A stretch of 64,000 bases of DNA from Macrostomum lignano. Taxonomy: Eukaryota. The position numbers were made by a program, and so were the translations under genes. Where the stretch lies: the NCBI GenBank assembly GCA_002269645.1, contig NIVC01002201.1:30008-94007 (forward strand). Direction: 5' to 3'. The notes beneath the pieces are model-generated. The model was not told the DNA's origin and made no database searches. It saw nothing but the letters and a program-made list of their open reading frames with translations. Positions 1,104 through 60,341 of the stretch are shown here, piece after piece (positions within the stretch are counted from its first letter, which is position 1; every line of letters begins with the position of its first letter).

Positions 1104-19756
<18,653 letters not shown>

Positions 19757-26000: not shown

Positions 26001-26166
26001 CGCCGAGGTTCGACGTAGCCGCAGCTGCGACCTGCTCCGGCTGATCGGCCGGCTGCGCAGGCGGTGCCCGGCTGCCGCGGCCGCCGAGCTGGGACCCCGG
26101 CAGTACGTGTTCCTGCTGGAGTGCCTGCACCTGTACGCCTACCTGCTGCGCCAGAGCGTGCTGTAG
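23035..26166 (+). CDS. Receptor-type protein-tyrosine-phosphatase-like pseudophosphatase (signal peptide, short ectodomain, single TM, degenerate PTP domain), ~560 aa
   Basis: Preferred model join(23035..23398,24528..24558,24882..26166) = 1680 nt; alternative middle exon 24461..24558 joined to 24886. Signal peptide (YYWLLLLFLLGMTQA), RRKR site, Ala/Leu TM followed by RHLRRRRR. PTP-like remnants LWEANCTVVCSL, SFTAAWDPASGLP, FIGPGPGLAGSALL, DLLRLIGRLRRRCP and RQYVFLLECL occur in PTP order. The domain call is by eye. Confidence 0.72.
23470..24236. repeat. Compound minisatellite: 29-bp (GAGCACACTTCAGGGTGTACATGTAGGTT) then 25-bp (GAGAGCACAGTTCAGGGTGTGGGAT)
   Basis: Intron 1 of the PTP-like gene; unit switches at ~23700. 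Confidence 0.95.
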
Positions 26167-41107: not shown

Positions 41108-41552
41108 TCACCACAGCTCCAGCGGTTGCAGGGCCGGGGCGGCCGATACCCGCTCGTGTAGGCGAAACTTCTGGCTGATCACAGTGCGCACGTCTGTGTC
41201 CTGCGCGGGCCAGGATAAGGGAAATACGCTTGTTAGGTTAGCTATATTCCGATATGTTTTGTAGTTAACATCTACTAACAACCCACCTGACTAGCAATGA
41301 ACTCGAGGAAGGGTAGCAACTTGAAGAGCTCCCGATCCTCGGAGTCTGTGTACCACGACGAGATGGGGATGCCGTTGCTGAGCTGATAAGCGAACGCCTG
41401 AGGCGAATTGTCCACGATCACTGTGGCGGACATGTCCCGGTCCAGGATGCTCAGGTCTTTGATGTAGTTGCCCTGGACTGACACGCAGTGCTCGCGGAAT
41501 AGCCGGTGCCTGCGGCGCGAGATTAGCGATGAAGGGACTGAGTGAGGGCCTG

Positions 41553-41639
<87 letters not shown>

Positions 41640-41640
41640 A

Positions 41641-41673
<33 letters not shown>

Positions 41674-42028
41674 CTAAGACAGACACTAAGACAGACAGAT
41701 AGACACTAAGACAGACAGACAGACACTAAGACAAACAGACTAACAGACAGACAGACAGACAGACACTAAGACAGACAGACAGACAGACACTAAGACAGAC
41801 AGATAGACACTAAGACAGACAGACAGACACTAAGACAGACAGACAGACAGACACTAAGACAGACAGATAGACACTAAGACAGACAGACAGACACTAAGAC
41901 AGACAGACAGACAGACACTCTGACAGACAGACAGACAAACACTAAGACAGGTAGACAGACAGACAGACAGGCAGGCAGACAGACAGACAGACAGGCAGGC
42001 AGACAGACAGACAGACAGACAGACACGC

Positions 42029-42061
<33 letters not shown>

Positions 42062-44058
42062 GGCAGGCAGAGAGACATAAAGACAGACAGACAGACACTA
42101 AGACAGACAGACAGACAGACACTAAGACAGGTAGACAGACAGACAGACACTAAGACAGGTAGACAGACAGACAGACAGGCAGGCAGACAGACAGGCAGAC
42201 AGACAGGCAGGCAGACAGACAGAAAGACAGACAGACAGACACTAAGACAGACAGACAGACACTAAGACAGACAGACAGACAGACACTAAGACAGGTAGAC
42301 AGACAGACAGATAGGCAGGCAGACAGACAGGCAGACAGACAGGCAGGCAGACAGACAGACAGACACGCAGACAGACAGACAGACAGGCAGGCAGGCAGAC
42401 AGACAGACAGGAAGGCAGGCAGACAGACAGACAGACAGACAGACACGCAGACAGACAGACAGCCCAGCTGCACCTGATGAAGCGCTTCTCCGGGTCCAGG
42501 ATGTCCAGCAGGGCGTCCGCATAGTCACGGATGCTGGCAGTGAACAGCACCACCTCGAACAGCTGGGAGACTCGGTGCAGGAATTCATGAAAGCCGGGCC
42601 TCAGCTTCACGTGCACCTTGTACTCAACAAACTCGAATGAGACAGGGAAGGTGAGATCGGCGCCGTGCAGGAAGTTGTCCACGCTGGAGTGCACCAGCGT
42701 CTCATCCAAGTCCAGCACCAGGGTGCATCGCGGAGTCCGGCGGGTCTTTTTCGGCAGCACCGGGATGCGCTGGGGCTGGCCGGCGGCGCCGGCGGGAGGC
42801 TGCGGATGAAGCTGAACCTGAAAATTTATTTTAAAATGCTACACTGTACATGAAACGTATAAAAGTAAGTTGATTAAAAGGGCCTGTTCTCTGAACTTGG
42901 TGCACTGGTTTAGTGGTGGGTAATTCATAGATAAAATAAATACCTGCACAAATAAACAGAATGTGCAGGTTTGATTAGGGAATGTGTAGGTTTGATTAGG
43001 GAATGTGTAGGTTTGATTAAGAAATGTGCAGGTTTGATTAGGGAATGTGCAGGTTTGATTACGGAATGTGCAGGTTTAGTTAGGGAATGTGCAGGTTTAG
43101 TTAGGGAATGTGCAGGTTTAGTCAGGGAATGCGCAGGTTTAGTCAGGGAATGTGCAGGTTTAGTCAGGGAATGTGCAGGTTTAGTCAGGGAATGTGCAGG
43201 TTTAGTCAGGGAATGTGCAGGTTTAGTCAGAGCAAGTGAAACCTGTCGAGTCTCTAGAAGATCAGACAAGGTGAACTGAGGGCACTCACGGATCCAAGTA
43301 GTCCTCAGTGGCGGTGCCGGCACAATATCTGTACTCCTCCGGATCGGTGTACTTCCTAGCCAGCAGCTGCTCATGCTCACTGCTAGCTAGAGGATTTTTA
43401 CAAGCCATGGCGTTTTCGTCAGTGACTGGCGGCTGAGTCGGCTCCGCAATTGGCGCGGCGCCGTCGCCGGCTCCGTCGTTGGCACCGACGGCCGTGGCTT
43501 CAATCTCTTCCTCTTCGGCCTCCTCCTCGGAGCCGCCATCGTCCGAGGATTCGCCGCTGTCGGGCGCCGGCAGCTCCTTGTCGGCCGGTGCTGGCGCAGT
43601 AATGTTAGCGGCTGTTGCTAAGGAAGCCAAATCGACCGAATGATGCACGAGGCAGCGACGCCGGGACAGCAGGCGAGCCGGGTTTCGTCCACGACGCCGC
43701 TGCTTGGTTGTCCGCTCCGCCGCCAGCTGCTGCTTCCTGCTGCCAGAATTATTATTGTCATCGTTGCCAGCCGCGTCAACAGCAGCTGGCGTCGGATCTT
43801 CGAATGCCGGCGAGAACAGCCGGCCGTGCAGGTGAGTTCTGGTCCGCTTCGGCGTGCCAGCAGCTTTGGCGGCGCACGACGGCGAGGATGAAACGCCAAC
43901 CTGTTGAGGCGGCGGACGGCGAATCCGACGAAGGCGGTGCTGCTGCTGATGCTGCTGCTGCTGTTGAGCGGCTGAAGTGATGAAGGAGGCACCGCCGCCG
44001 CCGCCGCAAACCCTGGCCGGAGCAGTCTGGATCCTGTGCAGCCTTGCGTGTCGAGCAT
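41108..44058 (-). CDS. CTDSPL2: CTD small phosphatase-like protein 2 (SCP4/CTDSPL2), FCP1-like HAD phosphatase; contains apparent frameshift(s)
   Basis: Exons complement(41108..41200, 41287..41509, 42474..42817, 43290..~44058). Motifs [34 protein letters not shown] (DxDxT intact), [52 protein letters not shown] and DVR..I..KFRLH, plus upstream LFSPAF. A 1-nt shift lies at ~42780. The 5' end is uncertain. Confidence 0.92.
41552..42461. repeat. (GACA)n microsatellite with GACACTAA/GGCA variants, CTDSPL2 intron
   Basis: Fills intron 41510-42473. Confidence 0.96.
42960..43230. repeat. 21-bp minisatellite (GGGAATGTGCAGGTTTAGTCA)n, CTDSPL2 intron
   Basis: In intron 42818-43289. Confidence 0.94.
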
Positions 44059-44112
44059 TCTTTGATCTGGTCTGGGCTGCACGGCGGAACCAACGTTCCA
44101 GAGATTGGTTGG

Positions 44113-44118
44113 TTTATA
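44113..44118 (-). promoter_or_regulatory. Candidate TATA box for CTDSPL2
   Basis: TATAAA on - strand, 55 nt upstream of ATG 44058. Position only; no TSS data. Confidence 0.35.
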
Positions 44119-44264
44119 AGGAGGAGGGAGATTTATCCCAGTTTGCTCTCTTTATCGCTGGCCGCTAGAATCAAAGTGTTGATACTAGCCGCATGAATGT
44201 AAATTTATAGAGGCAAATTCTAATTCAATGAAAAGAAATTATATCTTTTTTCTAACTGGAACAG

Positions 44265-44715
44265 TCAGAGACGAGCTGGTTATTCTGTTTCTATCCCAAC
44301 CAATCATAGTCGAGCTGGTTACTCTTTTTTGCATACCAGCCAATAAGAGTCGAGCTGGTTACTCTTTTTTTCTATCCCAGCCGATAAGAGACGAGCTGGT
44401 TATTCTTTTTTTCCAGCCAATCAGAGTCGAGCTGGCTACTCCTATTTTTATCCGGACCAATCAGAGTCGAGCTGGTTACTCTTTTTTTCTATCCCAGCCA
44501 ATAAGAGACGAGCTGGTTATATTATTTTTTTCCAGCCTATCAGAGTCGAGCTGGTTATTCTTTTTCCATCCCAGCCAATCAGAGACGAGCTGGTTATTCT
44601 TTTTCCATCCCAGCCAATCAGAGACGAGCTGGCTACTCCTATTTTTATCCGGACTAATCAGGGACGAGCTGGATACAATTTTTCTATCACGAGCAATCAG
44701 AGACCAGCTAGCTAT
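44265..44715. repeat. Diverged ~39-40-bp tandem repeat carrying CCAAT motifs (CAGCCAATCAGAGACGAGCTGG...)
   Basis: ~11 units between the TOP2 stop and the CTDSPL2 start; most carry CCAAT or a one-base variant. Confidence 0.85.
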
Positions 44716-45113
44716 TCTATTCTAGCTAGGAATACATTACCTATCAGACTAATAGAAGATCAGTTAGGAAAACAACATACTCGTAGTTACAAAAAGTAGT
44801 CAACTTTATACTTGATATATAAAAATTACAAGTCCAGGTATAATCAGTAGAAAATACAAGCAAGTAGAAATGCAATTTCTTGAAAAAGCAGTTAAATTCA
44901 ATCCTTTTTGTGCTTCGCAAAATAGACATCCAAAACACAGGAGGAAGCATCCATTATAAACCTTTTTCAAATACAATTGCGTCTACACTTTCATAAGCAA
45001 ACACTGAAAATGCAGTCAATAAAATAACTAACTTTTCAAGCTTAAAAAACGATTTTTACTCGTATTTTAATCTGAACTGTTAATCACAAGACTTTTAAAT
45101 TTCAATTTTGTCG

Positions 45114-48100
45114 TTAAAAACCGTCGCTAACGAGATCGCAGGGCGGTGACACAACGGTGGGCATGAGCCCCGCCGGTGGCCTGATGACTGCCTGGCCGTG
45201 GCCTGGCCGATGGTCGGACTGCTGCTGCAGTTGGTGGCCAGAGAGAGAGAGAGAGAGAGAGGGAGTTCGTCATTTACTGATACTGCTAACAATACTGGTG
45301 CATTACCTTGCTGCCCCAACCCATCCCCTACCCCAACCCATCCCCTACCCCAACCCACCCCTTCCCCGACCCACCCCTTCCCCAACCCATCCCCTACCCC
45401 AACCCACCCCTTCCCCGACCCACCCCTTCCCCAACCCACCCCTTCCCCAACCCACCCCTTCCCCAACCCACCCCTGCCCCAACCCATCCCTACCCCAACC
45501 CATCCCCTGCCCCAACCCATCCCTACCCTAACCCATCCCCCTGCCCAACCCACCCTACCCCAACCCACCCCTACCCCAACCCATCCCTACCCCAACCCAT
45601 CCCTACCCCAACCCATCCCTACCCCAACCCATCCCTACCCCAACTCATCCCTACCCCAACCCATCCCCTGCCCCAACCCATCCCTACCCCAAACCACCCC
45701 TGCCCCAACCCATCCCCTACCCAAACCCATCTCCCTACCCCAACCCATCCCTACCCCAACTCATCCCTACCCCAACCCATCCCCCTGCCCCAACCCATCC
45801 CTACCCCAAACCACCCCTGCCCCAACCCATCCCCTACCCAAACCCATCTCCCTACCCCAACCCATCCCTACCCCAACTCATCCCTACCCCAACCCATCCC
45901 TACCCCAACCCATCCCTACCCCAACTCATCCCTACCCAACCCATCCCTACCCAAACCACCCCTGCCCCAACCCATCCCCTACCCAAACCCATCTCCCTAC
46001 CCCAACCCACCCCCCTACCCCAACCCACCCCCTACCCCAACCCATCCCCCACCCCATCTCCAGTCAGTCCCAGCTCAAACCTCGGTCTCGCAGCCATCCT
46101 CCCCGTCGCCGCCGCCGCCCAGCTGCTTGGCCTCCTCCTTGGTGCAGGTGGCTGCCCGCGACTCCAAAGCGTTCAGATCTTCTAGCCAGGCCCTGGCCGG
46201 GGTCAGCTCGGCCAATTGGCGCAGCCGGCCGGCGGCTTCATCTCGATCCTGCAGCAGACGCTGCCGACGCTCCAGAGTCAGCGACCACACGGGCATCCGG
46301 AGCAGATAGTCGAATTCGTCGCCGCCGTTGAAATCGTCGGCATTTCGAATCGCGGCGGCCCGGACAGGATCGGGCTCGAACCCGGCGGCCGACAATCGCC
46401 GGTTTGTGTCCGACCGGCCGGTAAATCCGGACAGGTTTAATCGACCTTCGGCTACGTCTAAAGCGAATCGAGCTTGGTTGCTTAGCAACCGGACTAAAGC
46501 GTAGAGTTCGGCGCGTTGATAATCGAGTCGGCGCCTGTACATGTCCAGCCGGTGGTCGAAGTAGTCGCGCATGATGTCGCTGACCGTCTGGTACCTGGCG
46601 GGGATCGGGAAGTTGAGGAATGTTCAAAGAAACATTGGATCGCAAATCAGCTCAGCGGCAAACAGTTGCCAGCCGACAGTTGCCAGCTAACATTTGCCAG
46701 CCGATAGTTGCCAGCCGACAGTTGCCAGCCGATAGTTGCCAGCCGACAGTTGCCAGCTAACATTTGCCAGCCGATAGTTGCCAGCCGACAGTTGCCAGCC
46801 GATAGTTGCCAGCCGACAGTTGCCAGCCGACAGTTGCCAGCTAACAGTTGCCAGCCTAGAGTTGCCAGCCAAGAGTTGCCAGCCAAGAGTTGCCAGCCAA
46901 GAGTTGCCAGCAAAGAGTTGCCAGCCAACAGTTGCCAGCCAACAGTTGCCAGCCAACAGTTGCCAGCCAACAGTTGCCAGCCGACAGTTGCCAGCCAAGA
47001 GTTGCCAGCTAACAGTTGCCAGCCAACAGTTGCCAGCCGACAGTCGCCAGCCAAGAGTTGCCAGCCAACAGTTGCCAGCCGATAGTTGCCAGCCAAGAGT
47101 TGCCAGCTAACAGTTGCCAGCCAACAGTTGCCAGCCGACAGTCAGAAAATCCATTAGCTAATTGCACTAATCTCTTTGTGCCATCCCATCGGCCCGTGCA
47201 CTGACCTGCACATCCGGTCTCCGCTATCTGCCAGCACCATGGATCCGGTGCTGAACCGGCTACTCAAGCCGGAAGGATCGTATAGTCCCATCCGGTTAGC
47301 TCCTGGCCAGCTGAGACGGGTCCAGTTTAACTAGAAATCGAACTCGCCAATCCGAGCAGTAGTTATTGACAGACTCGGCCAGGCTGGCCAGGCTGCAGCC
47401 GTACGGCTCGCTCCAGACTCGAACAGGCAGTTCGGTGATTTCGAATATACCCGTATTAGCGTAGGCTAATAGCCGGCCGTAGGAAACGAACCGGCGACCG
47501 TCGGGCATGGCAACGATGCGGCCGGTGTGACCGCGAAATGCCGGCAGCATAGGCAGGGGCTCCGCTGTGCCGCCCTCGCGAAGCATGTGGCGCAGGTTCG
47601 CCATCACGTCGGCTAAGGAATGGTTGGGAATGCTGGTGTTCCAGCCGGTGCCGATGCCTTCGGCTCCGTTCACCACCGCTAGGGGCACCACTGGCGAGTA
47701 GCTGCGGGATGGGCGATAAGGAGAGACTTGATCTGACCTGAACCATGTCAACCTGACCTGACCCGTGTCCTGACTGACCTGACCCGTGCCTCACTGACCT
47801 GACCCGCGTCCACCTGACCTGACCCTAGGCCTGACCCTGTATTAACATGGCCTGACCTTGTATCAATATGACCTGACCCTGCATTAACATGGCCTGACCT
47901 TGTATCAATATGACCTGACCCTGCATTAACATGGCCTGACCCTGTATTAACATGGCCTGACCCTGTATCAATATGACCTGACCCTGTATCAATATGACCT
48001 GACTATGCATTAACATGGCCTGACCCTGTATTAATATGGCCTGACCCTGTATCAATATGGCCTGACCCTGTATTAACATGGCCTGACCCTGTATCAATAT

Positions 48101-51100
48101 GACCTGACCCTGTATCAATATGACCTGACCCTGTATCAATATGACCTGACCCTGTATCAATATGACCTGACCCTGTATCAATATGGCCTGACCCTGTATC
48201 AATATGACCTGACCCTGTATCAATATGACCTGACCCTGTATCAATATGACCTGACCCTGTATCAATATGACCTGACCCTGTATCAATATGGCCTGACCCT
48301 GTATCAATATGACCTGACCCTGTATTAACATGGCCAGACCCTGTATCAATATGGTCAGACCCTGTATCAACATGGCCTGACTCTAGGTGAAGTGACCTCA
48401 TCTAGACCAGAAATGAGAGTCTACCCTTATTAAAAGACAACTATCCACAAGATCCTGCATCCACTAACACACAGGTGACAAACCTGACAGGTTCAACCCG
48501 TTCGCCATCCTCCATCCGATAGTTTAGCAGGGCATCATCGTCAGGATGAAAGATAAGCCGAGCCAGCGGAGACAGGCAGGTGTAAATATACCTGGCAGCG
48601 GCTGCGTCCTTACCGCCGAGCAATCTGGAGCCGAACTGACCGCCAGGCACTAACAAATTGATATTGTTAGAGCCGGGGAAATTCTGCGCCATGCCAACTA
48701 TAGTATTGAATAGGGCTCCATCGCCGTGCCTGTAGGCTGTTAGTTCGGCTACGCTGCCAGCCAGCTGGGGCACTCTGATTGGCTGGCGTTGGCGGCGCTT
48801 GAAACAGGTGTACAATACCTTCCGCTGCGACGGTTTCAAGCCGTCCATTAAGGCCGGTATGGAACGCCGATTATCGGCTAGAGAGAATTGGACCAGCTCG
48901 CGATGGATGAAATCTGAGCAGCTTAGCTCGGCATTTGGCGACGATTTGTTGAGCTCTTCTGCCAGAGAGGAGCTTAGAGGGGCAGCGTCGGACTGATGGT
49001 CGCTGTGGGGGGAGACACGTTGATTTTGTCACATGCACAGCCGGCTCTCAGTGATAGAAGGCGAGATAGACTGTGGGATTTCTAGAATTTCTAAGAAAAT
49101 GTTGATTTCTAGGAAAAACTACTGATGTTTGGAGGAAAAAAAGATTTCTAGCAAAAGCTACAACAATTTCTAAGGAAAAATACTGGGATTTCTAGGAAAA
49201 TACTGGGATTTCTAGGAAAACACAGGGATTTCTAGAAAAATACTAGGATTTCTAGGGAAAACATTGATTTCTATGGAAAATACTGCAATACTTGGGAAAA
49301 ATACAAGGACTTTTAGGAAACTGGGATTTCTAGGAAAATACTGGGATTTCTAGAAAAAAAACCAGTGATTTCTAGGAAAACACAGGGATTTCTAAAAAAA
49401 TACTGGAATTTCTAGGGAAAACATTGATTTCTATGGAAAATACTGCAATACTTGGGAAAAATACAAGGACTTCTAGGAAAATACTGGGATTTCTAGGAAA
49501 ATACTGGGATTTCTAGGAAAATACTGGGATTTCTAGAAAAAAAAAGCAGTGATTTCTAGAAAAAAAGCAGTGATTTCTAGGAAAATACAGGGATTTCTAG
49601 GAAAACACAGGGATTTCTAGAAAAATACTAGGATTTCTAGGGAAAACATTGATTTCTATGGAAAATACTGCAATACTTGGGAAAAATACAAGGACTTTTA
49701 GGAAACTGGGATTTCTAGGAAAATACTGGGATTTCTAGAAAAAAAAGCAGTGATTTCTAGGAAAACACAGGGATTTCTAAAAAAATACTGGAATTTCTAG
49801 GGAAAACATTGATTTCTATGGAAAATACTGCAATACTTGGGAAAAATACAAGGACTTCTAGGAAAATACTGGGATTTCTAGGAAAATACTGGGATTTCTA
49901 GAAAAAAAGCAGTGATTTCTAGGAAAATACAGGGATTTCTAGGAAAACACAGGGATTTCTAGAAAAATACTAGGATTTCTAGGAAAAATACAGGGATTTC
50001 TAGGAAAATTTTGGGATTTCTAAGAAAATTATTGCGATTTCTAAGATAGACGGTGGGATTTCAAGGATAAACAGTGGCAATCAGATAATGAAATTGAGAC
50101 AAAATCGGCACTAGTAGTCACACAATGGTGCCAGAATTCTACGAGTACAATACAAGGCCGAATTGATCTCCTACTCACTCAGCGGCAGCCTCGGCCAGCC
50201 AGGCCTTTCGCGCATCGGCATCGGGTCCGAATGCCAGCACCAGGGCGGCGTCGTCCTGCTCTCCGCCTTGGCCGGCATCGCGTCGGACAAGCCGGACAGA
50301 CTGGCCAGAGAACAATCGGACAAAGAAGCGCCTACCCTCGGCGGCAGTGAAACCGCCTAAGCCTTTGTAATACTTCAAAGACCAGCGCCGCCAGTCTGGC
50401 TTAGAGCTAATCCACTTGGCCAGCGAGTCCATAGAATAGAATTCTTCGCTATCCGCTTTCACGTCGGCTGGCGGCGTTGCCTTAGCAATCGGCATCACTA
50501 ATAGGCGCAAAAAATCCCACCTGCTTAACAATAGTTCCGGCCAGAAGCAGTGCAACAGATTCAATACTAGGCCTCGGATATGAATGCCGTCCGTGTCCTG
50601 ATCGGACATGATTAGAATTCGGCGATAGTGCAAACTGGCCAAGTCGGCTTCTGTCTCGTAGCGTTTGCCAAGCTGCGTGTGTGCGTGCGTGGGTGGGAAT
50701 TGAATTATTGACTGTTCCAGCATGTTGCTACTGTTAGTAGCATGGTTGGCATAGGCCTTGGGTAATACATAAACAGGATAAATGTATCATTTAGCTATTA
50801 GTGACATACTATCATTGATAAAGGACACAGATACCTGGTACCATGGATACAGGACAAAAATCCCATGAATAAAGGACGCAAATATCATTGATAAAAGACA
50901 CAGATCCCATGGATAAAGGACACAGATCCCATGGATAAAGGACACAGATCCCATGGATAAAGGACACAGATCCCATGGATAAAGGACACAGATCCCATGG
51001 ATAAAGGACACAGATCCCATGGATAAAGGACACAGATCCCATGGATAAAGGACACAGATCCCATGGATAAAAGACACAGATCCCATGGATAAAGGACACA

Positions 51101-54100
51101 GATCCCATGGATTGATGGATAAAGGACACAGATCCCAGGGGGCATAAATAAAAGACACAGATTCCATGGATAAAGGACACAGATCCCATGGATAAAGGAC
51201 ACAGATCCCATGGATAAAGGACACAAATGCCATTGATAAAGGACACAGATCCCATGGATAAAGGACACAGATCCCATGGATAAAGGACACAGATCCCATG
51301 GATAAAGGACACAGATCCCATGGATAAAGGACACAGATCCCATGGATAAAGGACACAGATCCCATGGATAAAAGACACAGATCCCATGGATAAAGGACAC
51401 AGATCCCATGGATAAAGGACACAGATCCCAGGGGGCATAAATAAAAGACACAGATCCCATGGATAAAGGACACAGATCCCATGGATAAAGGACACAGATC
51501 CCAGGGGGCATAAATAAAAGACACAGATCCCATGGATAAAGGACACAGATCCCATGGATAAAGGACACAGATCCCATGGATAAAAGACACAGATCCCATG
51601 GATAAAGGACACAGATCCCATGGATAAAGGACACAGATCCCATGGATAAAGGACACAGATCCCATGGATAAAAGACACAGATCCCATGGATTAAGGACAC
51701 AAATGCCATGGATAAAGGACACAGATCCCATGGATAAAGGACACAGATCCCATGGATAAAGGACACAGATCCCAGGGGGCATAAATAAAAGACACAGATC
51801 CCATGGATAAAGGACACAGATCCCATGGATAAAGGACACAGATCCCATGGATAAAAGACACAGATCCCATGGATAAAAGACACAGATCCCATGGATTAAG
51901 GACACAAATGCCATGGATAAAAGACACAGATCCCATGGATTAAGGACACAAATGCCATGGATAAAGGACACAGATCCCATGGATAAAGGACACAGATCCC
52001 ATGGATAAAGGACACAGATCCCATGGATAAAGGACACAGATCCCATGGATAAAGGACACAGATCCCATGGATAAAGGACACAGATCCCATGGATAAAGGA
52101 CACAGATCCCATGGATAAAGGACACAGATCCCATGGATAAAGGACACAGATCCCATGGATAAAGGACACAGATCCCATGGATAAAAGACACAGATCCCAT
52201 GGATAAAGGACACAGATCCCATGGATAAAAGACACAGATCCCATGGATAAAGGACACAGATCCCATGGATAAAAGACACAGATCCCATGGATAAAGGACA
52301 CAGATCCCATGGATAAAAGACACAGATCCCATGGATAAAGGACACAGATCCCATGGATAAAGGACACAGATCCCATGGATAAAAGACACACACAAGAAAC
52401 AAAATTAAAACCCGATAAAATCCGCATACCTACAAGCCTTACGCCCCCATATTTACGCTACAGACCAGCAAACAATTCAGCCAAGCAAAAAGCCGGCGCC
52501 TCACCCGCAGCCCAACAACATCGCAAAGCAGTTGCAACAGGCGACTCTCAGCCAGGGTGGTGGGCGCAGCCTCCCTGGCATTGATTAGCTTGCCCTGCAG
52601 TGCCAACACGCCGATCCGATCTCGACCGCCGGGAACCGCAGCCGCTCCGGCCACGGCAAGCGCCTTGGCCGAGTCGCCCTCAGTCAGTACCAGGACGCAG
52701 TCGTTGCCGCGCCCGACGCCTGAAGCTACTAGATTGGCGTGCTGCAGTTTGCCAGCAGCGGCAGCAGCAGCGGCGGCCACCTTAGCACCCGAGGCTGCTG
52801 CCGAAGCTTCAGCCAAAGATTTCTCGCGACTTCTATTCGATGCGGAATCAGCAGCAGCGGCAAGCATGGAGCTGCAAACGGCCTGACCGACGCTGCCCCG
52901 CTTGCCAACGTCGGCCAGAACGCTGACAAAACTGCCGCCTTTGATCAGCTCCTCCGGCACGGCGGCAGCGGCGCCGAATTTCGACGCCGGTAAAGTGAGC
53001 CGGCGCTTCGCCTGCGATTCGAAACTGGGATTGTCAACTCGGCAGCTGCAGAATAGCCAGAGACGCCGGCGAACCTGCGAAGAGGGAGAAATGCGAGTTA
53101 TTTCTGTCATGGCTCTGTGCATTGATGCTCTGTGATTTGGGCCCTAACTCGAAGAAACAGACAGAGGGGGAATAAAATAGGCTGGGATCCCAGAGGAATA
53201 ATGATGGATTAATGATCAGGGATCCCATTTCCGTAGGAATAAAATTGACAGTCACCCGAAAGAAGAAATAATATGGACAGGAATCCCAGGGGGGATAAAA
53301 TGGACAGGAATCCCAGGGGGAAAAATGGACAGGAATCCCAGGGGGATAAAATGGACAGGAATCCCAGGGGGATAAAATGGACAGGAATCCCAGGGGGGAA
53401 TAAAATGGACAGGAATCCCAGGGGGGAATAAAATGGACAGGAATCCTAGGGGGGAATAAAATGGACAGGAATCCCAGGGGGATGAAATGAAGACAGATCC
53501 CAGGGGGAAAGGACAGGGATCCCAGGGGGAATAAAATGGACAGGAATCCCAGGGGGGAATAAAATGGACAGGAATCCCAGGGTGGGTGAATAAAATGGAC
53601 AGGAATCCCAGGGGGAATAAAATGGACAGGAATCCAGGGGGGAATAAAATGGACAGGAATCCCAGGGGGGAATAAAATGGACAGGAATCCCAGGGGGATG
53701 AAATGAAGACAGATCCCAGGGGAAAGGACAGGGATCCCAGGGGGGGGGGATAAACAACGGACAGAACTGCCACAGGACACATTACTAAAGTGCCTAAGCT
53801 ACCTGTGAAGGCTTCACAGCCGGAAAGGCATCGATAAGCCTCCGCCGCCGCTTTCCAAGCGCTGTGGAATTTCTCAGCGAAGCATCGACAGCTTCGGTCA
53901 GCGGCCGCAGCAGCCGGTCGCACAGCAGCTCAACGTGCCGACCGCCAGCCGGAGTTGCTATGGCATTAACAAAGCTCACGTGACGAAACCCGTAATTAGC
54001 ATCGACAATCTCGTCATTAGAATCGACACCGCCGCCGCCAGACGCGCAGGCGGCCACCAGCCATCGCTGATTGGCGGCGCTAACCAGCAGGCTGCCAGGC

Positions 54101-57100
54101 GGCGCGTACATTTCACAGTAGTGCCGGAAACTTCTCACCGGCACCTGTTGGTCGTTAAAGTACACGCGCACTCCCGGGCAGGTGGCGGCCAGATCGTAGG
54201 CTCTGCGTTGAATCAATGCGACAAGGTCGGCGTCCAGGCTGGTCGACCCGAATCTGGCCAAGTCGGGCTTGAATGTCACTCGGGTGTAGTCTGGACCGCC
54301 GTTGGCTGCTTGCACCTGCAGCAGGGTGGGATGGGTGTTGGGACAATCTATGGTATGAAACTTTCACCCAGTTATCAGCAACAATAAACACAAACTCTCA
54401 CCCAGTTATCAGCAAAAGTAAACACAAACTCTCACCCAGTTATCAGCAAAAGTAAACACAAACTCTCACCCAGTTATCAGCAAAAATAAACACAAACTCT
54501 CACCCAGTTATCAGCAAAAGTAAACACAAACTCTCACCCAGTTATCAGCAACAATAAACACAAACTCTCACCCAGTTATCAGCAAAAATAAACACAAACT
54601 CTCACCCAGTTATCAGCAAAAATAAACACAAACTCTCACCCAGTTATCAGCAACAATAAACACAAAATCTCGCCTAGTTATCAGCAAAAATAAACACAAA
54701 CTCTCACCCAGTTATCAGCAAAAATAAACACAAAATCTCGCCTAGTTATCAGCAAAAATAAACACAAAATCTCGCCTAGTTATCAGCAAAAATAAACACA
54801 AACTCTCACCCAGTTATCAGCAAAAGTAAACACAAAATCTCACACAGTTATCAGCAGCAATAAACACAAACCCTGATCCAGTTATCAGCAACAATAAACA
54901 CAAACCCTGATCCAGTTATCAGCAACAATAAACACAAACCCTGATCCAGTTATCAGCAACAATAAACACAAACCCTGATCCAGTTATCAGCAACAATAAA
55001 CACAAACCCTGATCCAGTTATCAGCAACAATAAACACAAACCCTGATCCAGTTATCAGCAACAATAAACACAAACTCTCACTGAAATAAACTACAATAAA
55101 CACAAAATCCCACTTCAATGAGCTACAAGAAACAAAAACAAAATCTCACTGAAATAAGCCGCAGTTAACACAAAATCTCGCAGAAATCAGCAACAATAAA
55201 CACAAACTCTCACCCAGTTATCAGCAAAAGTAAACACAAAATCTCACACAGTTATCAGCAGCAATAAACACAAACCCTGATCCAGTTATCAGCAACAATA
55301 AACACAAACCCTGATCCAGTTATCAGCAACAATAAACACAAACCCTGATCCAGTTATCAGCAACAATAAACACAAACCCTGATCCAGTTATCAGCAACAA
55401 TAAACACAAACCCTGATCCAGTTATCAGCAACAATAAACACAAACCCTGATCCAGTTATCAGCAACAATAAACACAAACCCTGATCCAGTTATCAGCAAC
55501 AATAAACACAAACTCTCACTGAAATAAACTACAATAAACACAAAATCCCACTTCAATGAGCTACAAGAAACAAAAACAAAATCTCACTGAAATAAGCCGC
55601 AGTTAACACAAAATCTCGCAGAAATCAGCAACAATAAACACAAATCTCACTTTAATCTCACTGAAAAACGCTACAATAAACAGAATATCACCCAATTATG
55701 AGCAACAATAACTCCAAGCGACACTGCAACTCACCGCAGGCTCCCCAGCCACTGTCATATTGTCTCTCCAAGCCTGCCGAAACTCCAGGCCGGTCTGGCC
55801 GCTCCGAGTCTCCACAGAGAACTCCTTGCTAAACACGTTGGCCAGCTTCGCCCCGAATCCGTTCCGCCCACCCGTGGTAGCCTTGACCGAGTCGTCGAAA
55901 TTGCTGGAAGTTAACAGCCGGCCAAATAGCAGGCTAGGCACGTACCGGCTGTCAGGATCGTCAGGGTGTACAGCAACTGGGACGCCGCGGCCGTTGTTCC
56001 AGACTTCCACTGTGCCAGTCGTCGAGTCCACGGCGATGCGAATGTCCTTAGTGCCGGCCGGATCTCGCTGCCAGTTATCCGCCGCGTTCACAATAATCTC
56101 GTCACAGATCCGGTACAGGCCGGGCGAGTAGCACAGCTCACGCTCGGACATCCGATCGCCGCAGCTGTCCGGCCGCAGTGTCCAGGCCAGCTGTTTGGCC
56201 GGCTCGATAGAACCAATGTAGGCGTCCGGGCGCAATAGCATGTGCTCAGTGGGCGACTTCAGCTGGGTTTGGGAGAGCAGGGATAAGGGGTGTGTGGGTG
56301 TTGTTACAGATAGATAGACTAGCTGACAGACACAGACAGACAGACAGACACATACACTAAGACAGACAGACAGACACTAAGGCACTAAGACAAACAGACA
56401 GACACTAAGACACTAAGACAAACAGACAGAAAGACACTAATACATAGACAGACACTAAGACACACAGATACTGAGACACTAAGACAAACAGACAAACAGA
56501 CAGACAGAAAGACATTTTTAAAGGAAACTAAGACTTTAGGACAATTAGACACTAAAACAAACAGACAGACTGCCGCCACGCTTTCACCATAAAATATTTC
56601 GCTCGCCAGACAAGCGAAAAAATAAAATACACAATACAAACGCACAGCACTCACCTGGTAGACCTGTTCCACTGACCGGAGCTGGCTATCATCGCTACTG
56701 TCCCAGTTGCCAACGCATCCGCCATTGTGCACTCTTCCACCATAGCCAGCGGTGCGGAGGCATCCCAGCCGTAGCAAACTTGCTCTTCCCCCAAATAGTG
56801 CATAATACCTGTCATATTAGCCAGTCCAGGTGTGAGAAGGGGTTAGCAAAATTTAATAGTAATTGCATAATATAACCTTAGATTTATAGCCGAACTTTAA
56901 ATATCAGGTGTATTTAAATTCTACTCATGTTCCATGCTACTCATGTTGAAATAAGTAGTTTAAACTTTAAAGCACAATGCAACAAATATTTGAATATGAT
57001 TACAAAAACTTAGTAACCCACCTGGTCCTGTTGTACCTCTGCAACAGTGAACTAATCATTGCATATTGAATACAGTTAAACTTTGTGCCTCTTTAGTAGC

Positions 57101-57448
57101 ATCATGCAATAAGTATTAATAGAATTATAGCAAAATAATTCATATTGAAAAATGTGAGTTTGAACTGAATAAGTAGTTTGGATTAATTAGCATAAAGCAC
57201 AAAATGCTATACATATGATTTTTACTATCAATACCATAAGTATTAGCAAATTTTAGCATATACTTTATAATGGCTTAGTGGTACTTGCTAAATCAATTTT
57301 TTTATGTGGTAAAGATAAGTCTAGCTAGATTCTAGACATTTTATAACAATTTAACTTAGACAATAGATTTACTTGACAACATTTGATGCATATTTTAGCA
57401 ATATTATAGTTAATAAATAAATTTGTCAATGGATAAATTGCTTACCAT
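45114..57448 (-). CDS. TOP2: Divergent DNA topoisomerase II (type IIA) paralog, ~1300 aa, lacking most of the CTD; one apparent frameshift
   Basis: Exons complement(45114..45224, 46081..46594, 47206..47701, 48484..49002, 50179..50672, 52505..53074, 53803..54315, 55735..56262, 56655..56807, tentatively 57446..57448). Motifs [117 protein letters not shown] (catalytic Tyr), [10 protein letters not shown] and [13 protein letters not shown]. The first and last exons are less certain; the protein could instead end at 46075. Confidence 0.9.
45313..46055. repeat. C-rich/G-rich degenerate repeat (CCCCAACCCATCCCTA-type) in last TOP2 intron
   Basis: Sense (-) strand reads GGTAGGGATGGGTTGGGG..., with dense G3-G4 tracts. 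Confidence 0.93.
46660..47143. repeat. 14-bp minisatellite (GTTGCCAGCCGACA)n, TOP2 intron
   Basis: Fills intron 46595-47205. Confidence 0.95.
47735..48380. repeat. 21-bp minisatellite (CTGACCCTGTATCAATATGAC)n, TOP2 intron
   Basis: Fills intron 47702-48483. Confidence 0.95.
49075..50060. repeat. ~20-bp minisatellite (CTGGGATTTCTAGGAAAATA)n with 385-bp higher-order period, TOP2 intron
   Basis: Fills intron 49003-50178. Confidence 0.93.
50815..52388. repeat. 22-bp minisatellite (GATCCCATGGATAAAGGACACA)n, TOP2 intron
   Basis: Fills intron 50673-52504. Confidence 0.96.
53270..53755. repeat. ~27-bp minisatellite (GGACAGGAATCCCAGGGGGAATAAAAT)n, TOP2 intron
   Basis: In intron 53075-53802; G-run length varies. 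Confidence 0.94.
54355..55690. repeat. 34-bp minisatellite (AATAAACACAAACTCTCACCCAGTTATCAGCAAC)n, TOP2 intron
   Basis: Fills intron 54316-55734 and includes a 438-bp internal duplication. Confidence 0.95.
56308..56570. repeat. (GACA)n/GACACTAA microsatellite, TOP2 intron
   Basis: In intron 56263-56654; same variant unit as 41552-42461. Confidence 0.9.
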
Positions 57449-58104: not shown

Positions 58105-60341
58105 CGAGGGGCGTCCGGAAAGTAGTGTTACTTTTGCTTGGTGTGGACGTATGGACAGTCACACTTGCATGTGCTTGGTGTCATTTGAAAGCGGCAAGTC
58201 TCTTCTTTAAAATGACACTAATTGCAAGATATTTGAATATGTGCTTCAAGAGATATGGACGATTAAGTAGAGAAAGGTCAGTCATAGACTTACAGAACCT
58301 CAAAAATGTCAATAGAAAACTTTTATGAGTTTATCGATTTTTTTGTAATCATGGGCTGTCTATGGCCAAATGTGATGCAGTGAACAAGAAGGGCTGTCTC
58401 ATAAAACTACGGGACTTGTAAAACTGCTTCTGCTGCGCCTGCAAAGTTTATTGACATTCAATTTTCAATTGTGAACTGCAAATGGATGTGCATTCAAAGA
58501 CTGGGCAGCGACATGCCATCTTTACACTTTAGAGCTCTGGAACCAAATTGGCTGACATCCACAGGCAACTTTGCACAGCTCATGGCGACCATGCTGTCAG
58601 CAAGATGACAGTAAGCAGGTGGGTGGGCGAGTTTCAGGCTGGAAGAACTGACGTGAGCGACATGCCAAGGTCCGGACGCCCTGCAATTCGCGACAGCAGC
58701 AGCCTGACGGATCGCATTCTCGACTTGATTGATGAAGACTGCTGCCAGAGCATTCGCAAAATGGCCGATCGATTGGATTGCCCAAAGTCCACAGTTCACG
58801 AGTGCCTGCAGAAGATGAATCACGTCAAGCTGAGTGCCCGTTGGGTACCACAATTGCTCACTGAGGTCATGAAGCTGGATCGCCAGCAGAAATGTGTGAA
58901 CAACCTGGAGCTAGTCAATCAACATGGAGGATGGGAAGCCTTTCGAGAGCTGATCGTAACTGGCGACGAGACATGGGTGCCATACTTTGACCCTCCAACG
59001 AAGCAATAGTCAATGGTTTGGACCATCAGGGGATCTGATCCACCAATGAAAGCTCGCCGAGACCGGCACAGCAACAAAGTCATGCTGACTCTCTTTTTTG
59101 ATTGCAATGGCCCACTGACCATCGAGTTCCTGGAGCCAAACTTGACCATCAATGCTGACCGGTATGTGACCTCCCTGACAAAACTGAAGTAAGACATCTG
59201 CAACAAAAGACGGGGGAAAGAAAGACCCCATATCCTCCACCACGACAATGCGAGGCCGCATACTGCTGCAAAGACCATGCAAGCAATTGACCAACTGAAC
59301 TTTGAGTTGCTTCCTCACCCTCCATATTCTCCTGACCTGGCACCTGCGGACTTCGCCTTGTTTCCTGAGTTAAAGCGACAGCTTCGAGGGCGAGTTCACA
59401 ACAGTCGTGATCACTTGGAGAGTGAGGTCAGGAGGATCTTGCTGCACCAGATCCCAAGAAATGTGTATGCAAATGCCATCGACAAGATGCGAGACCGATG
59501 GGAGAAGTGCATCATGTCTCATGGTAACTACGTTGAGAAGACAAGTCTACCAACCAATGAATGATTTTAATGTTGTTCGCTTGTATGATAATTTGCTTGT
59601 TATCTGTTTCACCTGCTTCTGTACTGTACTATTGTGTTTTTTGTTTTTTCTGGAGTAATTACGCTTGTAATAAAAGTTTTCTGTTGACATTTTTGAGGTT
59701 CTGTAAGTCCATGACTGACCTTTCTCTACTTAATCGCCCATATCTCTTGAAGCACAGATTCAAATCTCTTGCAATTGGTGTCATTTTAAAGAAGAGACTT
59801 GCCGCTTTCAAATTGAAACGAAAAATTATATGGGTTTTCCCATATTATCGTTTCCTTCTGCCAACAGTTCAGGAAGACAACGAACAATGGACCTGATGGT
59901 AACTTTCTCTGTGTGATCTCTAGAGTCACATTCTCAAACTTCAGGCAAGGATCTTTCCTCTTCAATCAGTATATTTTATAAGCTAGCACACTGTACGCGA
60001 GCAACGAGGAATAGGAGCAGTAGGGAGAGAGAGTGGGATTTCGAGGCCCAATAGGCAGTGTCGGTCAGAGGTTGTGCATGCATCACGCGAGGGTCGCATG
60101 GCTGGGCTTCTTGCTCGCCGATCATCAGGACTATTTTTAGGCATGCAGATCTTGTACATCTGGGGAGTTGCTGGCAAGGCTGGATGCTTGTTCACGCATC
60201 ACGCGCGTGTCGGCTGATTTCTCCCATCCTCTTGCTAACGGCGCCTTCGTTTCACTTCAAAATGACACCAAGCACATGCAAGTGTGACTGTCCATACGTC
60301 CACACCAAGCAAAAGTAACACTACTTTCCGGACGCCCCTCG
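58105..60341 (+). mobile_element. Mariner (DD34D, irritans/Hsmar2-like CGAGGGG end) transposon, 2237 bp, long inverted repeats
   Basis: TA duplications at 58103-04 and 60342-43. Perfect 82-bp TIR at 58105-58186 / 60260-60341. Additional 144-bp inverted repeat at 58183-58326 / 59670-59813 (6 mismatches). Subfamily call is from memory of the TIR end only. Confidence 0.95.
58482..59564 (+). pseudogene. Mariner transposase, 360 codons, three in-frame stops, no frameshift
   Basis: Single frame from ATG 58482 to TGA 59562-64. Motifs HTH (DIHRQLCTAHG...TVSRW), RSGRP, RWVPQLL, IVTGDETWV, HHDNARPH and YSPDLAPADF. Stops are TAG 58530, TAG 59007 and TAA 59190. Confidence 0.92.

What the first reader, a model, noticed from the sequence alone, without database searches (positions are those of the whole stretch)
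45114..57448. CTD-less TOP2 paralog with a mitochondrial-presequence-like N-terminus: candidate dedicated mitochondrial type II topoisomerase in an animal
Seen: the spliced product (~1300 aa) keeps the ATPase Glu/Asn (DEIIVN), G-loop, QxK lysine, TOPRIM acidic residues (TEGD, DQDTD) and catalytic RY. It ends <=40 aa after the coiled-coil/C-gate, so the long basic NLS-bearing CTD of canonical animal TOP2 (human TOP2A is 1531 aa) is absent. The N-terminus reads (M)[35 protein letters not shown]: Arg-rich with no acidic residue for ~35 aa. Established: mitochondrion-dedicated type IIA enzymes exist in trypanosomatids (TOP2mt) and Dictyostelium (TopA), and CTD-less TOP2s are typical of large DNA viruses such as chloroviruses. 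Inference: this is a second, divergent TOP2 specialised for mtDNA, or an intronised viral/horizontally acquired gene. I do not know of a described dedicated mitochondrial TOP2 paralog in flatworms.
Basis: partly seen in the sequence, partly recalled or inferred. Interest (0 to 1): 0.85.

Follow-up and report, generated by a model that had tools for sequence, protein, structure and literature searches.

The report
CTD-less divergent TOP2 paralog, flatworm
The flatworm Macrostomum lignano carries a second, fast-evolving but still constrained topoisomerase II gene that has lost the long nuclear tail and gained an acid-free, arginine-rich N-terminus, so it may work in mitochondria, though nobody has tested this and the copy in this window has a frameshift.

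Summary
The window is Macrostomum lignano contig NIVC01002201.1. On the minus strand, 57059-45114, lies a 10-exon GT-AG gene for a 1311-aa type IIA topoisomerase.

Confirmed:
- The catalytic motifs are kept.
- There is no long CTD. The tail is 59 aa, and the next gene (CTDSPL2-like) starts about 1 kb downstream.
- A separate canonical 1536-aa TOP2 with a CTD exists in the same genome.

Corrected:
- Its ATG exon at 57446 is out of frame.
- The transcript-based N-terminus is [25 protein letters not shown]..., 48 aa with no acidic residue and 7 Arg.
- This copy has a +1 frameshift at 47301, so NCBI truncates it to 1073 aa. One of the two sister copies is intact.

Origin: the paralog's nearest relative in 1.84 billion proteins is M. 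lignano's own TOP2. The two share two intron positions and lineage-specific motifs, so this is a lineage-specific duplication. It is neither viral nor an ancient mitochondrial lineage. dN/dS among copies is 0.09-0.25, so the gene is functional.

Mitochondrial targeting is plausible (about 0.4) but untested. Arg enrichment is protein-wide, and no trained predictor was available. The gene is already in databases as an uncharacterised "DNA topoisomerase 2".

The parts
57022..57059 (-). Exon 0: start codon ATG 57059-57057, encoding [12 protein letters not shown] and the first two bases of R13. Donor is AG|GTGGGT.
   Evidence: The same exon is in the NCBI transcript-based models at three loci (P0242, P0243, P0245) and is 100% identical in all three. 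An in-frame TAA lies at 57095-57093.
56655..56808 (-). Exon 1: the rest of the acid-free Arg-rich extension ([35 protein letters not shown]), then [16 protein letters not shown], the conserved N-terminal strap.
   Evidence: This exon has no in-frame ATG, and a TAA lies immediately upstream in frame. The extension therefore has to be translated if SVEQVYQ is.
55735..56262 (-). Exon 2: GHKL ATPase domain ([50 protein letters not shown]).
   Evidence: Pfam HATPase_c; alignment.
53803..54315 (-). Exon 3: end of the ATPase domain and the transducer ([15 protein letters not shown]; basic K-loop KRRRR). It carries a 15-aa insertion relative to other TOP2s.
   Evidence: Pfam DNA_gyraseB; alignment.
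52505..53074 (-). Exon 4: QTK loop (NPSFESQAK), an Ala-rich linker, and the first half of TOPRIM (LTEGDSA). The PLRGK motif has changed to ALQGK.
   Evidence: Toprim scores 22.3 bits against a cutoff of 23.1.
50179..50672 (-). Exon 5: TOPRIM acidic triad ([14 protein letters not shown]) and TOPRIM_C.
   Evidence: Pfam TOPRIM_C; alignment.
48484..49002 (-). Exon 6: winged-helix domain with the catalytic Arg-Tyr ([13 protein letters not shown]). The acceptor at 49002 follows the transcript-based models; a weaker alternative lies at 48972.
   Evidence: Pfam DNA_topoisoIV.
47206..47701 (-). Exon 7: tower domain ([10 protein letters not shown]). It contains the copy-specific +1 frameshift (extra A at 47301) and the indel cluster at 47279-47268 (DPSG in place of RYFR).
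   Evidence: Both lesions are absent from L002 and L003. NCBI truncates this copy here (P0242).
46081..46594 (-). Exon 8: coiled-coil and C-gate up to ...[32 protein letters not shown]. Donor is GAG|GTTTGA. If the donor is not used, the stop is TGA 46077-46075.
   Evidence: Pfam DNA_topoisoIV matches model positions 1-431 of 432.
45114..45224 (-). Exon 9: 36-aa tail [36 protein letters not shown] plus stop TAA 45116-45114. There is no CTD.
   Evidence: The tail is present in P0121 and P0243 and is 100% identical in the three loci.
41278..44058 (-). Downstream neighbour on the same strand: a CTDSPL2-like NIF/FCP1 phosphatase with ATG at 44058. It bounds the 3' end of the TOP2 gene.
   Evidence: (P0241, P0244), and (Pfam NIF).

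Best explanation
This is one of three near-identical copies in the polyploid M. lignano genome of a lineage-specific duplicate of the nuclear TOP2 gene.

Shown:
- The duplicate kept a complete type IIA catalytic core: ATPase, transducer, TOPRIM, WHD with Tyr, tower and C-gate.
- It evolved about three times faster than its sister gene.
- It lost the roughly 340-aa Lys-rich CTD that carries nuclear targeting and regulatory sites.
- It gained about 24 extra N-terminal residues. This gives a 48-aa acid-free stretch with 7 Arg that is necessarily translated.
- It is still under purifying selection.

Inferred:
- The enzyme performs ordinary ATP-dependent strand passage as a homodimer, but away from the canonical chromatin role.
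- The leading candidate site is the mitochondrial matrix. The N-terminal extension would act as a cleavable presequence, and the enzyme would relax or decatenate circular mtDNA.

The particular copy in the window is interrupted by a +1 frameshift. This is either a PacBio consensus error or a null allele.
For: Gene model and motifs:
- The model has 10 exons, all GT-AG.
- The catalytic motifs are intact in alignment with human, fly, cestode and M. lignano TOP2.
- Pfam finds HATPase_c, DNA_gyraseB, TOPRIM_C and a full-length DNA_topoisoIV. Human TOP2A is the best PDB match at 876 bits.

Origin by lineage-specific duplication:
- In the exhaustive HMMER search the best non-self hit is M. lignano TOP2, at 992 bits against 772 for the next.
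- NJ bootstrap support for the sister relationship is 165 of 200, and the paralog branch is 2.6-3.7 times longer.
- Two intron positions and phases are shared, along with Macrostomum-specific motifs.

Functional constraint:
- Among the three copies there are 26 synonymous and 14 nonsynonymous changes, giving dN/dS 0.09-0.25 (binomial P = 1.4e-7).
- Intron flanks are 2.6-3.9% divergent, against about 0.7% for exons.
- The NCBI models are named after clusters of the Mlig_RNA_3_7_DV1 transcriptome.

CTD absence:
- The stop is at 45114 or 46075, and the next gene's ATG is at 44058.

Presequence-like N-terminus:
- There is no D or E in residues 1-48, the longest acid-free run in the protein. For one window, P is about 0.003.
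- The stretch has 7 Arg, a short amphipathic segment at residues 2-12 (muH 0.68), phi-x-x-phi-phi motifs (ISSLL, YYALF) and an R-3-type motif RYY|A.
- Exon 1 has no in-frame ATG, so the extension must be translated for the conserved SVEQVYQ strap to be made.
Against: - No trained predictor (TargetP, MitoFates, DeepLoc) and no localisation or expression data were available.
- Arg-for-Lys replacement is protein-wide (K 2.6%, R 9.5%), so 'Arg-rich' is not specific to the N-terminus.
- The extension is Gly-rich, and its 18-residue hydrophobic moment is below the shuffle mean.
- Basic clusters in the core (KRRRR, KRRQRQ) could still act as nuclear localisation signals.
- Two of the three assembled copies carry frameshifts.
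- The PLRGK motif has changed to ALQGK.
- No orthologue was found in any other species, so conservation of the N-terminus cannot be judged.
- Human mitochondria manage with TOP1MT and TOP3A only (PMC9638942).
Confidence: 0.42

Rival explanations
1. The protein is a specialised non-mitochondrial TOP2 paralog, for example germline-, meiosis- or neoblast-specific, or cytoplasmic. It would reach DNA through core basic clusters or a partner protein. The N-terminal extension would then be a by-product of the protein-wide shift to Arg, Ala and Gly, with no targeting role.
For: - The K-to-R and Ala/Gly enrichment is protein-wide.
- KRRRR and KRRQRQ clusters lie in the core.
- The 18-residue amphipathic moment is weak.
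- From general knowledge, M. lignano has many lineage-specific duplicates with reproduction-related expression.
- Purifying selection fits any function.
Against: - Loss of the whole CTD removes the region that carries the nuclear localisation signals in canonical TOP2 (established knowledge of the family).
- A 48-aa acid-free N-terminus is the longest such run in the protein.
- No expression data support a germline pattern. The supplement search found nothing for these gene IDs.
Confidence: 0.38
2. The gene is a decaying duplicate or pseudogene left over from recent polyploidisation. The frameshifts would be real and the gene would be on its way out.
For: - The window copy has a +1 frameshift plus an indel cluster, and L003 has a 1-nt deletion.
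- NCBI annotates both as truncated products.
- The PLRGK motif is degenerate, and Toprim is just below the Pfam cutoff.
- The branch is three times faster than the sister gene's.
Against: - dN/dS among copies is 0.09-0.25, P = 1.4e-7.
- One copy (L002) is fully intact over 1311 codons.
- All the other catalytic residues are kept.
- The L003 lesion is a CCC-to-CC homopolymer change, typical of long-read error. The neighbouring CTDSPL2 in the window also has a GG-to-G deletion, which suggests a contig-wide indel error rate.
- Protein models from the other (ML2) assembly read through both sites (P0121).
Confidence: 0.1
3. The gene is horizontally acquired or viral (an NCLDV-type CTD-less topo II that later gained introns), or it belongs to an ancient eukaryotic mitochondrial TOP2 lineage of the kinetoplastid TOP2mt or Dictyostelium TopA type.
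For: Only the shared absence of a CTD and the protein length of about 1300 aa.
Against: - The nearest relative is the host's own TOP2, by 220 bits.
- NJ bootstrap support for that pairing is 82%.
- Intron positions, phases and lineage-specific indels are shared.
- ASFV topo II scores 240 bits against 876 for human TOP2A.
Confidence: 0.02

Closest known systems
Canonical Macrostomum lignano TOP2 (PAA94319.1 / BOX15_Mlig014497g1, 1536 aa) and animal TOP2A/TOP2B
   Same: The domain order and catalytic residues are the same. It is the closest sequence relative (45-54% identity). Two intron positions are shared, as are the motifs NNYCSD, FCxC and [20 protein letters not shown] and a 2-aa insertion before GRDR.
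   Different: The paralog lacks the roughly 340-aa Lys/Asp/Ser-rich CTD. Its N-terminus is about 24 aa longer and acid-free. Lys drops from 8.9% to 2.6% and Ala rises from 6.7% to 11.8%. It has Ala-rich linker insertions, ALQGK in place of PLKGK, and a branch about three times longer.
Kinetoplastid mitochondrial topoisomerase II (TOP2mt) and Dictyostelium TopA. The mitochondrial role of the trypanosomatid type II enzyme is reviewed in PMC6514783; Dictyostelium TopA and the details of both proteins are from my own knowledge.
   Same: Each is a separate nuclear gene for a type IIA enzyme without the long CTD, with an N-terminal extension for mitochondrial import. This is the architecture proposed here.
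   Different: The origin is independent: the flatworm gene is sister to its own nuclear TOP2. Import and mtDNA function are experimentally shown for those proteins and untested here. Kinetoplastids need the enzyme for the catenated kDNA network, and no comparable need is known for a flatworm mitogenome.
C-terminally truncated TOP2B reported in bovine heart mitochondria, and the disputed mitochondrial TOP2A/TOP2B of mammals (PMC6514783, PMC9638942)
   Same: An animal CTD-less TOP2 form associated with mitochondria.
   Different: In mammals it is the same gene product, no targeting sequence is known, and its presence is contested. PMC9638942 finds only TOP1MT and TOP3A in human mitochondria. Here there is a dedicated paralogous gene with its own N-terminus.
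CTD-less topo II of large DNA viruses (chlorovirus PBCV-1 from my own knowledge; ASFV P1192R structures such as 8j9y)
   Same: A compact enzyme without a CTD.
   Different: Sequence similarity is far lower (240 bits against 876 for human TOP2A). The flatworm gene has nine spliceosomal introns, two of them at host TOP2 positions.

Membership tests
Eukaryotic type IIA DNA topoisomerase (TOP2) | GHKL ATPase domain with the catalytic Glu, the Mg-binding Asn and the Gly-rich ATP lid | tested here: met
   [30 protein letters not shown] and [10 protein letters not shown] all align to human, fly and cestode TOP2. Pfam HATPase_c scores 36 bits against a cutoff of 26.4.
Eukaryotic type IIA DNA topoisomerase (TOP2) | Transducer domain with the QTK-loop lysine | tested here: met
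   NPSFESQAK aligns to NPTFDSQTK. Pfam DNA_gyraseB scores 52 bits.
Eukaryotic type IIA DNA topoisomerase (TOP2) | TOPRIM fold with the Glu and the DxDxD metal ligands | tested here: met
   LTEGDSA and IMSDQDTDG are conserved. Caveats: the Pfam Toprim score is 22.3 bits, just under the 23.1 cutoff, and the PL(R/K)GK motif reads ALQGK.
Eukaryotic type IIA DNA topoisomerase (TOP2) | Winged-helix domain with the catalytic Arg-Tyr, tower and coiled-coil C-gate, fused in one chain with the B-type half | tested here: met
   AAARYIYT and [10 protein letters not shown] are present. Pfam DNA_topoisoIV matches positions 1-431 of 432 at 305 bits. Human TOP2A residues 23-1220 are covered.
Canonical animal nuclear TOP2 (TOP2A/TOP2B type) | A long, basic, NLS-bearing C-terminal domain of about 300-400 aa | tested here: not met
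   The tail after the C-gate is at most 59 aa. The next gene starts about 1 kb downstream. The canonical M. lignano gene has the CTD.
Dedicated mitochondrial type IIA topoisomerase (functional class) | A cleavable N-terminal mitochondrial presequence | tested here: inconclusive
   In favour: 48 acid-free residues, 7 Arg, a short amphipathic N-terminal segment, and TOM20-like and R-3 motifs. Against: enrichment of Arg over Lys is protein-wide, the segment is Gly-rich, and the 18-residue moment is not above shuffles. No trained predictor was available.
Dedicated mitochondrial type IIA topoisomerase (functional class) | Demonstrated mitochondrial localisation and action on mtDNA | not testable with these tools
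   This needs GFP fusion or immunolocalisation, and RNAi with an mtDNA read-out.
Kinetoplastid TOP2mt / Dictyostelium TopA lineages | Orthology, meaning common descent with those genes | tested here: not met
   The nearest relative is the host's nuclear TOP2 (992 bits against 772), with 165 of 200 bootstraps. Named TOP2mt and TopA sequences were not in the tree.
NCLDV-type viral topo II / horizontally acquired gene | Phylogenetic affinity to viral sequences and no host-type introns | tested here: not met
   ASFV topo II scores 240 bits against 876 for human TOP2A. The gene has nine GT-AG introns, two of them at host TOP2 positions and phases.
Processed or unprocessed pseudogene | Disrupted reading frame together with relaxed constraint | tested here: inconclusive
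   This copy is disrupted by the +1 frameshift at 47301. The family is nonetheless constrained (dN/dS 0.09-0.25) and one copy is intact. The sequence alone cannot tell an assembly error from a null allele.

The most novel reading that the evidence does not exclude
An animal has evolved, by duplicating its own nuclear TOP2, a dedicated mitochondrial type IIA topoisomerase. The enzyme would have shed its CTD and acquired a presequence, converging on the solution seen in kinetoplastids, Dictyostelium and many algae. That would give a clean genetic handle, in a transgenesis-competent flatworm, on the disputed question of whether animal mtDNA uses a type II enzyme.
Probability: 0.4. Interest if true: 0.7.

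Novelty: new variant of a known kind. Interest (0 to 1): 0.5.

Why it matters
Whether animal mitochondria use a type II topoisomerase is disputed. Reviews describe TOP2B, including a CTD-less form, in mammalian mitochondria (PMC6514783). A systematic study found only TOP1MT and TOP3A in human mitochondria (PMC9638942). No mitochondrial targeting sequence is known for any animal TOP2.

A separate, constrained, CTD-less TOP2 gene with a presequence-like N-terminus could be removed or tagged without touching the essential nuclear enzyme. It sits in an animal where transgenesis and RNAi work.

Even if the protein is not mitochondrial, it is a natural experiment on what a metazoan TOP2 core does without its CTD, and on a striking Lys-to-Arg recoding of a whole enzyme.

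If the gene turns out to be a nuclear or germline duplicate, or the N-terminus is not a targeting signal, it is an ordinary lineage-specific paralog.

Tried and rejected
1. Rejected.
2. I tested whether the spliced leader could supply the AUG at that acceptor. The M. lignano SL ends in ...TTGCATG (PMC8629364), but it falls in the same wrong frame. Rejected.
3. Translation could start at Met71 (EHMLLRPD). This would drop the conserved [14 protein letters not shown] strap, so it is unlikely.
4. The 275-aa ORF at 44113-43289 has basic stretches followed by acidic ones, and I considered it as a hidden TOP2 CTD. It is the first coding exon of the CTDSPL2-like gene (P0241, P0244; GRLFSPAFE motif; NIF domain downstream). 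The fused TOP2-CTDSPL2 models P0122 and P0246 come from the other assembly and are read-through predictions.
5. I searched for orthologues in other species three ways: a full-length query, a 601-aa N-terminal query and an exhaustive HMMER search. None was found. In the exhaustive search, orthologues more than 50% identical would be hidden inside the P0121 cluster.
6. I looked for expression class in the supplements of PMC5816591. The gene IDs were not found, and the stored file is cut.
7. A literature search for Macrostomum plus topoisomerase returned nothing relevant.
8. A contig look-up for P0121 found no record.
It was rerun with P0242.


Full report
**Identity of the window**

The window is Macrostomum lignano. 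It is identical to NIVC01002201.1 of assembly GCA_002269645.1 (Mlig_3_7), and record coordinate = window coordinate + 30007. A draft translation of the region found M. lignano proteins at 92-96% identity (P0121 = A0A1I8ICT6, P0122 = A0A1I8IIA3). The next hit was M. lignano's canonical TOP2, P0123 = PAA94319.1, 1536 aa, at 45%. All other animal TOP2s were at 38-41%.

**Gene model**

The gene is on the minus strand. ORF fragments with Pfam HATPase_c, DNA_gyraseB, Toprim/TOPRIM_C and DNA_topoisoIV lie in the expected order. I built a 10-exon model in which every junction is GT-AG with a pyrimidine-rich acceptor:

| Exon | Window coordinates |
|---|---|
| E0 | 57059-57022 |
| E1 | 56808-56655 |
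| E2 | 56262-55735 |
| E3 | 54315-53803 |
| E4 | 53074-52505 |
| E5 | 50672-50179 |
| E6 | 49002-48484 |
| E7 | 47701-47206 |
| E8 | 46594-46081 |
| E9 | 45224-45114 |

- The E6 acceptor follows the transcript-named NCBI models.
- The same exons are annotated at three loci by NCBI: PAA60030.1 for this window, PAA62286.1 and PAA86639.1.
- The locus tags follow clusters of the Mlig_RNA_3_7_DV1 transcriptome. I did not read the annotation method itself.
- The intact copy encodes 1311 aa from the first Met.

**Check of the observation**

- [30 protein letters not shown] and [10 protein letters not shown] in the ATPase domain;
- NPSFESQAK in the QTK loop;
- LTEGDSA and IMSDQDTDG in TOPRIM;
- AAARYIYT, the catalytic Arg-Tyr;
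- [10 protein letters not shown] in the tower.

DNA_topoisoIV matches model positions 1-431 of 432. Human TOP2A residues 23-1220 are covered at 876 bits.

Two blemishes stand out. The near-universal PL(R/K)GK motif reads ALQGK. The Pfam Toprim score (22.3 bits) is just under the cutoff (23.1).

1. Its N-terminus '(M)VLCTIWGRAS...' splices two reading frames. VLCTIWG belongs to a frame that terminates after 38 codons, and GRASLLRLG... is the TOP2 frame.
2. The ATG at 57446 cannot feed that frame. The true start is ATG 57059 in a 38-nt exon, giving [13 protein letters not shown]|[40 protein letters not shown]....
3. This copy is not intact. An extra A at 47301 shifts the frame between ...KLDPSQLAR and ANRMGLY.... 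A -1/+1 indel pair then turns RYFR into DPSG at 47279-47268. NCBI accordingly annotates a 1073-aa product ending ...QLARS.

**Absence of a CTD**

- Exon 8 ends ...GEDGCETE at a GAG|GTTTGA donor.
- The annotated last exon adds 36 residues and stops at TAA 45116-45114.
- If the donor were skipped, TGA 46077-46075 would stop the protein one codon later.
- In either case the tail after ...LNALESRAA is at most 59 aa, against about 340 aa in the canonical M. lignano protein.
- The next gene on the same strand, a CTDSPL2-like NIF phosphatase, starts at ATG 44058.
- The interval in between is AT-rich spacer plus a 39-nt minisatellite.
- I first suspected that the basic-then-acidic 275-aa ORF at 44113-43289 might be a CTD. 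It belongs to that phosphatase.

**Origin**

- An exhaustive HMMER scan of 1.84 billion cluster representatives ranks M. lignano's canonical TOP2 first after self, at 992 bits. There is then a drop to 772 bits.
- In a 38-taxon NJ tree on 1043 well-aligned columns the two are sisters in 165 of 200 bootstraps.
- Three-point distances put the paralog's branch at 2.6-3.7 times the canonical one.
- I recovered the canonical gene's structure exactly (L001, 8 exons). Two of its seven introns coincide in position and phase with paralog introns (alignment columns 956 and 1152, both phase 2).
- The two proteins share features absent from other animals: NNYCSD, FCxC in the transducer, [20 protein letters not shown], and a 2-aa insertion before GRDR.
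- ASFV topo II scores only 240 bits.

The gene is therefore a DNA-level duplicate of the host's own TOP2 within the Macrostomum lineage. It was not acquired from a virus, and it does not belong to the kinetoplastid or Dictyostelium mitochondrial lineages. No orthologue was found outside M. lignano. The databases may simply lack other macrostomid proteomes, and orthologues more than 50% identical would be hidden inside the P0121 cluster.

**Is it functional?**

I fetched the other two loci, L002 = NIVC01001954.1 and L003 = NIVC01000270.1, and aligned the three coding sequences.

- L002 is intact over 1311 codons.
- L003 has a single CCC-to-CC deletion.
- Outside the indel cluster there are 26 synonymous and 14 nonsynonymous differences.
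- Pairwise dN/dS is 0.09-0.25 with dS about 0.017. The binomial probability of so few nonsynonymous changes under neutrality is 1.4e-7.
- Intron flanks differ by 2.6-3.9%, against about 0.7% for exons.

The family is under purifying selection.

The sequence alone cannot decide whether the window's frameshift is real. Three points favour an assembly error:
- the L003 lesion is a homopolymer change;
- the adjacent CTDSPL2 in this same contig also has a GG-to-G deletion two codons after its ATG;
- models from the other assembly (ML2) read through both sites.

**Mitochondrial hypothesis**

What is shown:
- Exon 1 has no in-frame ATG and has a TAA just upstream. The conserved strap [25 protein letters not shown] can therefore only be made if translation begins at Met1 of exon 0. 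The 57 residues before it are obligatorily part of the precursor.
- Residues 1-48 contain no Asp or Glu. This is the longest acid-free run in the protein; P is about 0.003 for a given window at 11.3% D+E.
- The stretch has 7 Arg and no Lys.
- Residues 2-12 form a strongly amphipathic helix on paper (muH 0.68).
- There are two phi-x-x-phi-phi motifs and an R-x-Y|A motif.
- The extension is about 24 aa longer than the canonical N-terminus.

What weakens it:
- The whole protein has swapped Lys for Arg (K 2.6%, R 9.5%, against 8.9% and 6.1% in the canonical core) and is Ala/Gly-rich. GC3 is equal in the two genes (0.67 and 0.69), so this is a protein-level shift.
- The extension has 9 Gly.
- Its best 18-residue moment (0.27) is below the shuffle mean (0.44).
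- KRRRR and KRRQRQ clusters in the core could act as nuclear localisation signals.
- I could not run a trained predictor, and I found no expression or localisation data.

I therefore rate mitochondrial import as the single most likely reading, at about 0.4, with a specialised non-mitochondrial role close behind.

**Context**

- Dedicated mitochondrial type II enzymes are established in trypanosomatids and reported in many algae (PMC6514783). Dictyostelium TopA is from my own knowledge.
- In animals the question is open. A CTD-less TOP2B was reported in bovine mitochondria and full-length TOP2A/TOP2B in mouse and cultured cells, with no targeting sequence known (PMC6514783).
- A systematic study concluded that human mitochondria contain only TOP1MT and TOP3A (PMC9638942).
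- I found no paper on M. lignano TOP2.
- The proteins are in UniProt and NCBI only as automatic 'DNA topoisomerase 2' or 'hypothetical protein' entries.

**Verdict**

- The sequence-level observation is largely right but needs three corrections: the N-terminal residues, the start coordinate, and the frameshift in this copy.
- The 'second, divergent, CTD-less TOP2' reading is supported.
- The viral or horizontal-transfer alternative is rejected.
- The mitochondrial reading is plausible and readily testable, but unproven.
- This is a new variant of a known kind, of moderate interest.

Noticed in passing
window 44044-44058 (minus strand; CTDSPL2-like start): The downstream CTDSPL2-like gene reads ATGCTCGACACG here but ATGCTCGGACACG in the sister locus L002. 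This is a 1-nt deletion two codons after the ATG that frameshifts this copy too. Two adjacent genes with indels suggest either a raised indel error rate in this contig or a degenerating haplotype.
   Followed up: partly
window 45225-55734 (introns 2-8 of the TOP2 paralog): Seven of the nine introns consist mostly of a minisatellite array, each with a different unit (34, 28, 22, 20/61, 21, 14 and 16 nt). Array lengths differ greatly among the three gene copies; intron 2, for example, is 1419, 495 and 827 nt, while the exons are about 99% identical.
   Followed up: partly
window 26289-37443: An 11-kb tandem array with a 16/32-nt unit (GGGAGAGTGGGAGACT) shows extreme strand asymmetry, with GC skew about +0.77. 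It produces long spurious ORFs on the minus strand.
   Followed up: no
window 44058-45114, and proteins P0122 and P0246: The TOP2 paralog and CTDSPL2 lie on the same strand, about 1.06 kb apart, of which 454 nt is a minisatellite. Two gene models from the other assembly fuse them into one protein. By the repeat-adjusted 1-kb criterion of PMC8629364 the pair could be an SL-resolved operon, if CTDSPL2 is trans-spliced.
   Followed up: no
window 4308-5076 (minus) and 58548-59009 (plus): There are two mariner/Tc1-type transposase remnants, with DDE_3/Transposase_1 and Mos1-type HTH_48 hits. The antisense of the second was used as a false N-terminus in the database model P0122.
   Followed up: partly
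whole paralog protein (P0243) compared with P0123: The composition has shifted across the whole protein. Lys falls from 8.9% to 2.6%, Arg rises from 6.1% to 9.5% and Ala from 6.7% to 11.8%, while GC3 is unchanged (0.67 and 0.69). This is not mutational GC drift at silent sites, and it remains unexplained.
   Followed up: partly
window 11812-12765 (plus) and 24844-26166 (plus): An ankyrin-repeat exon (Pfam Ank_2) is embedded in 28-nt repeat-derived ORF sequence. Separately, a 440-aa GC-rich ORF has no Pfam match. Neither was examined further.
   Followed up: no
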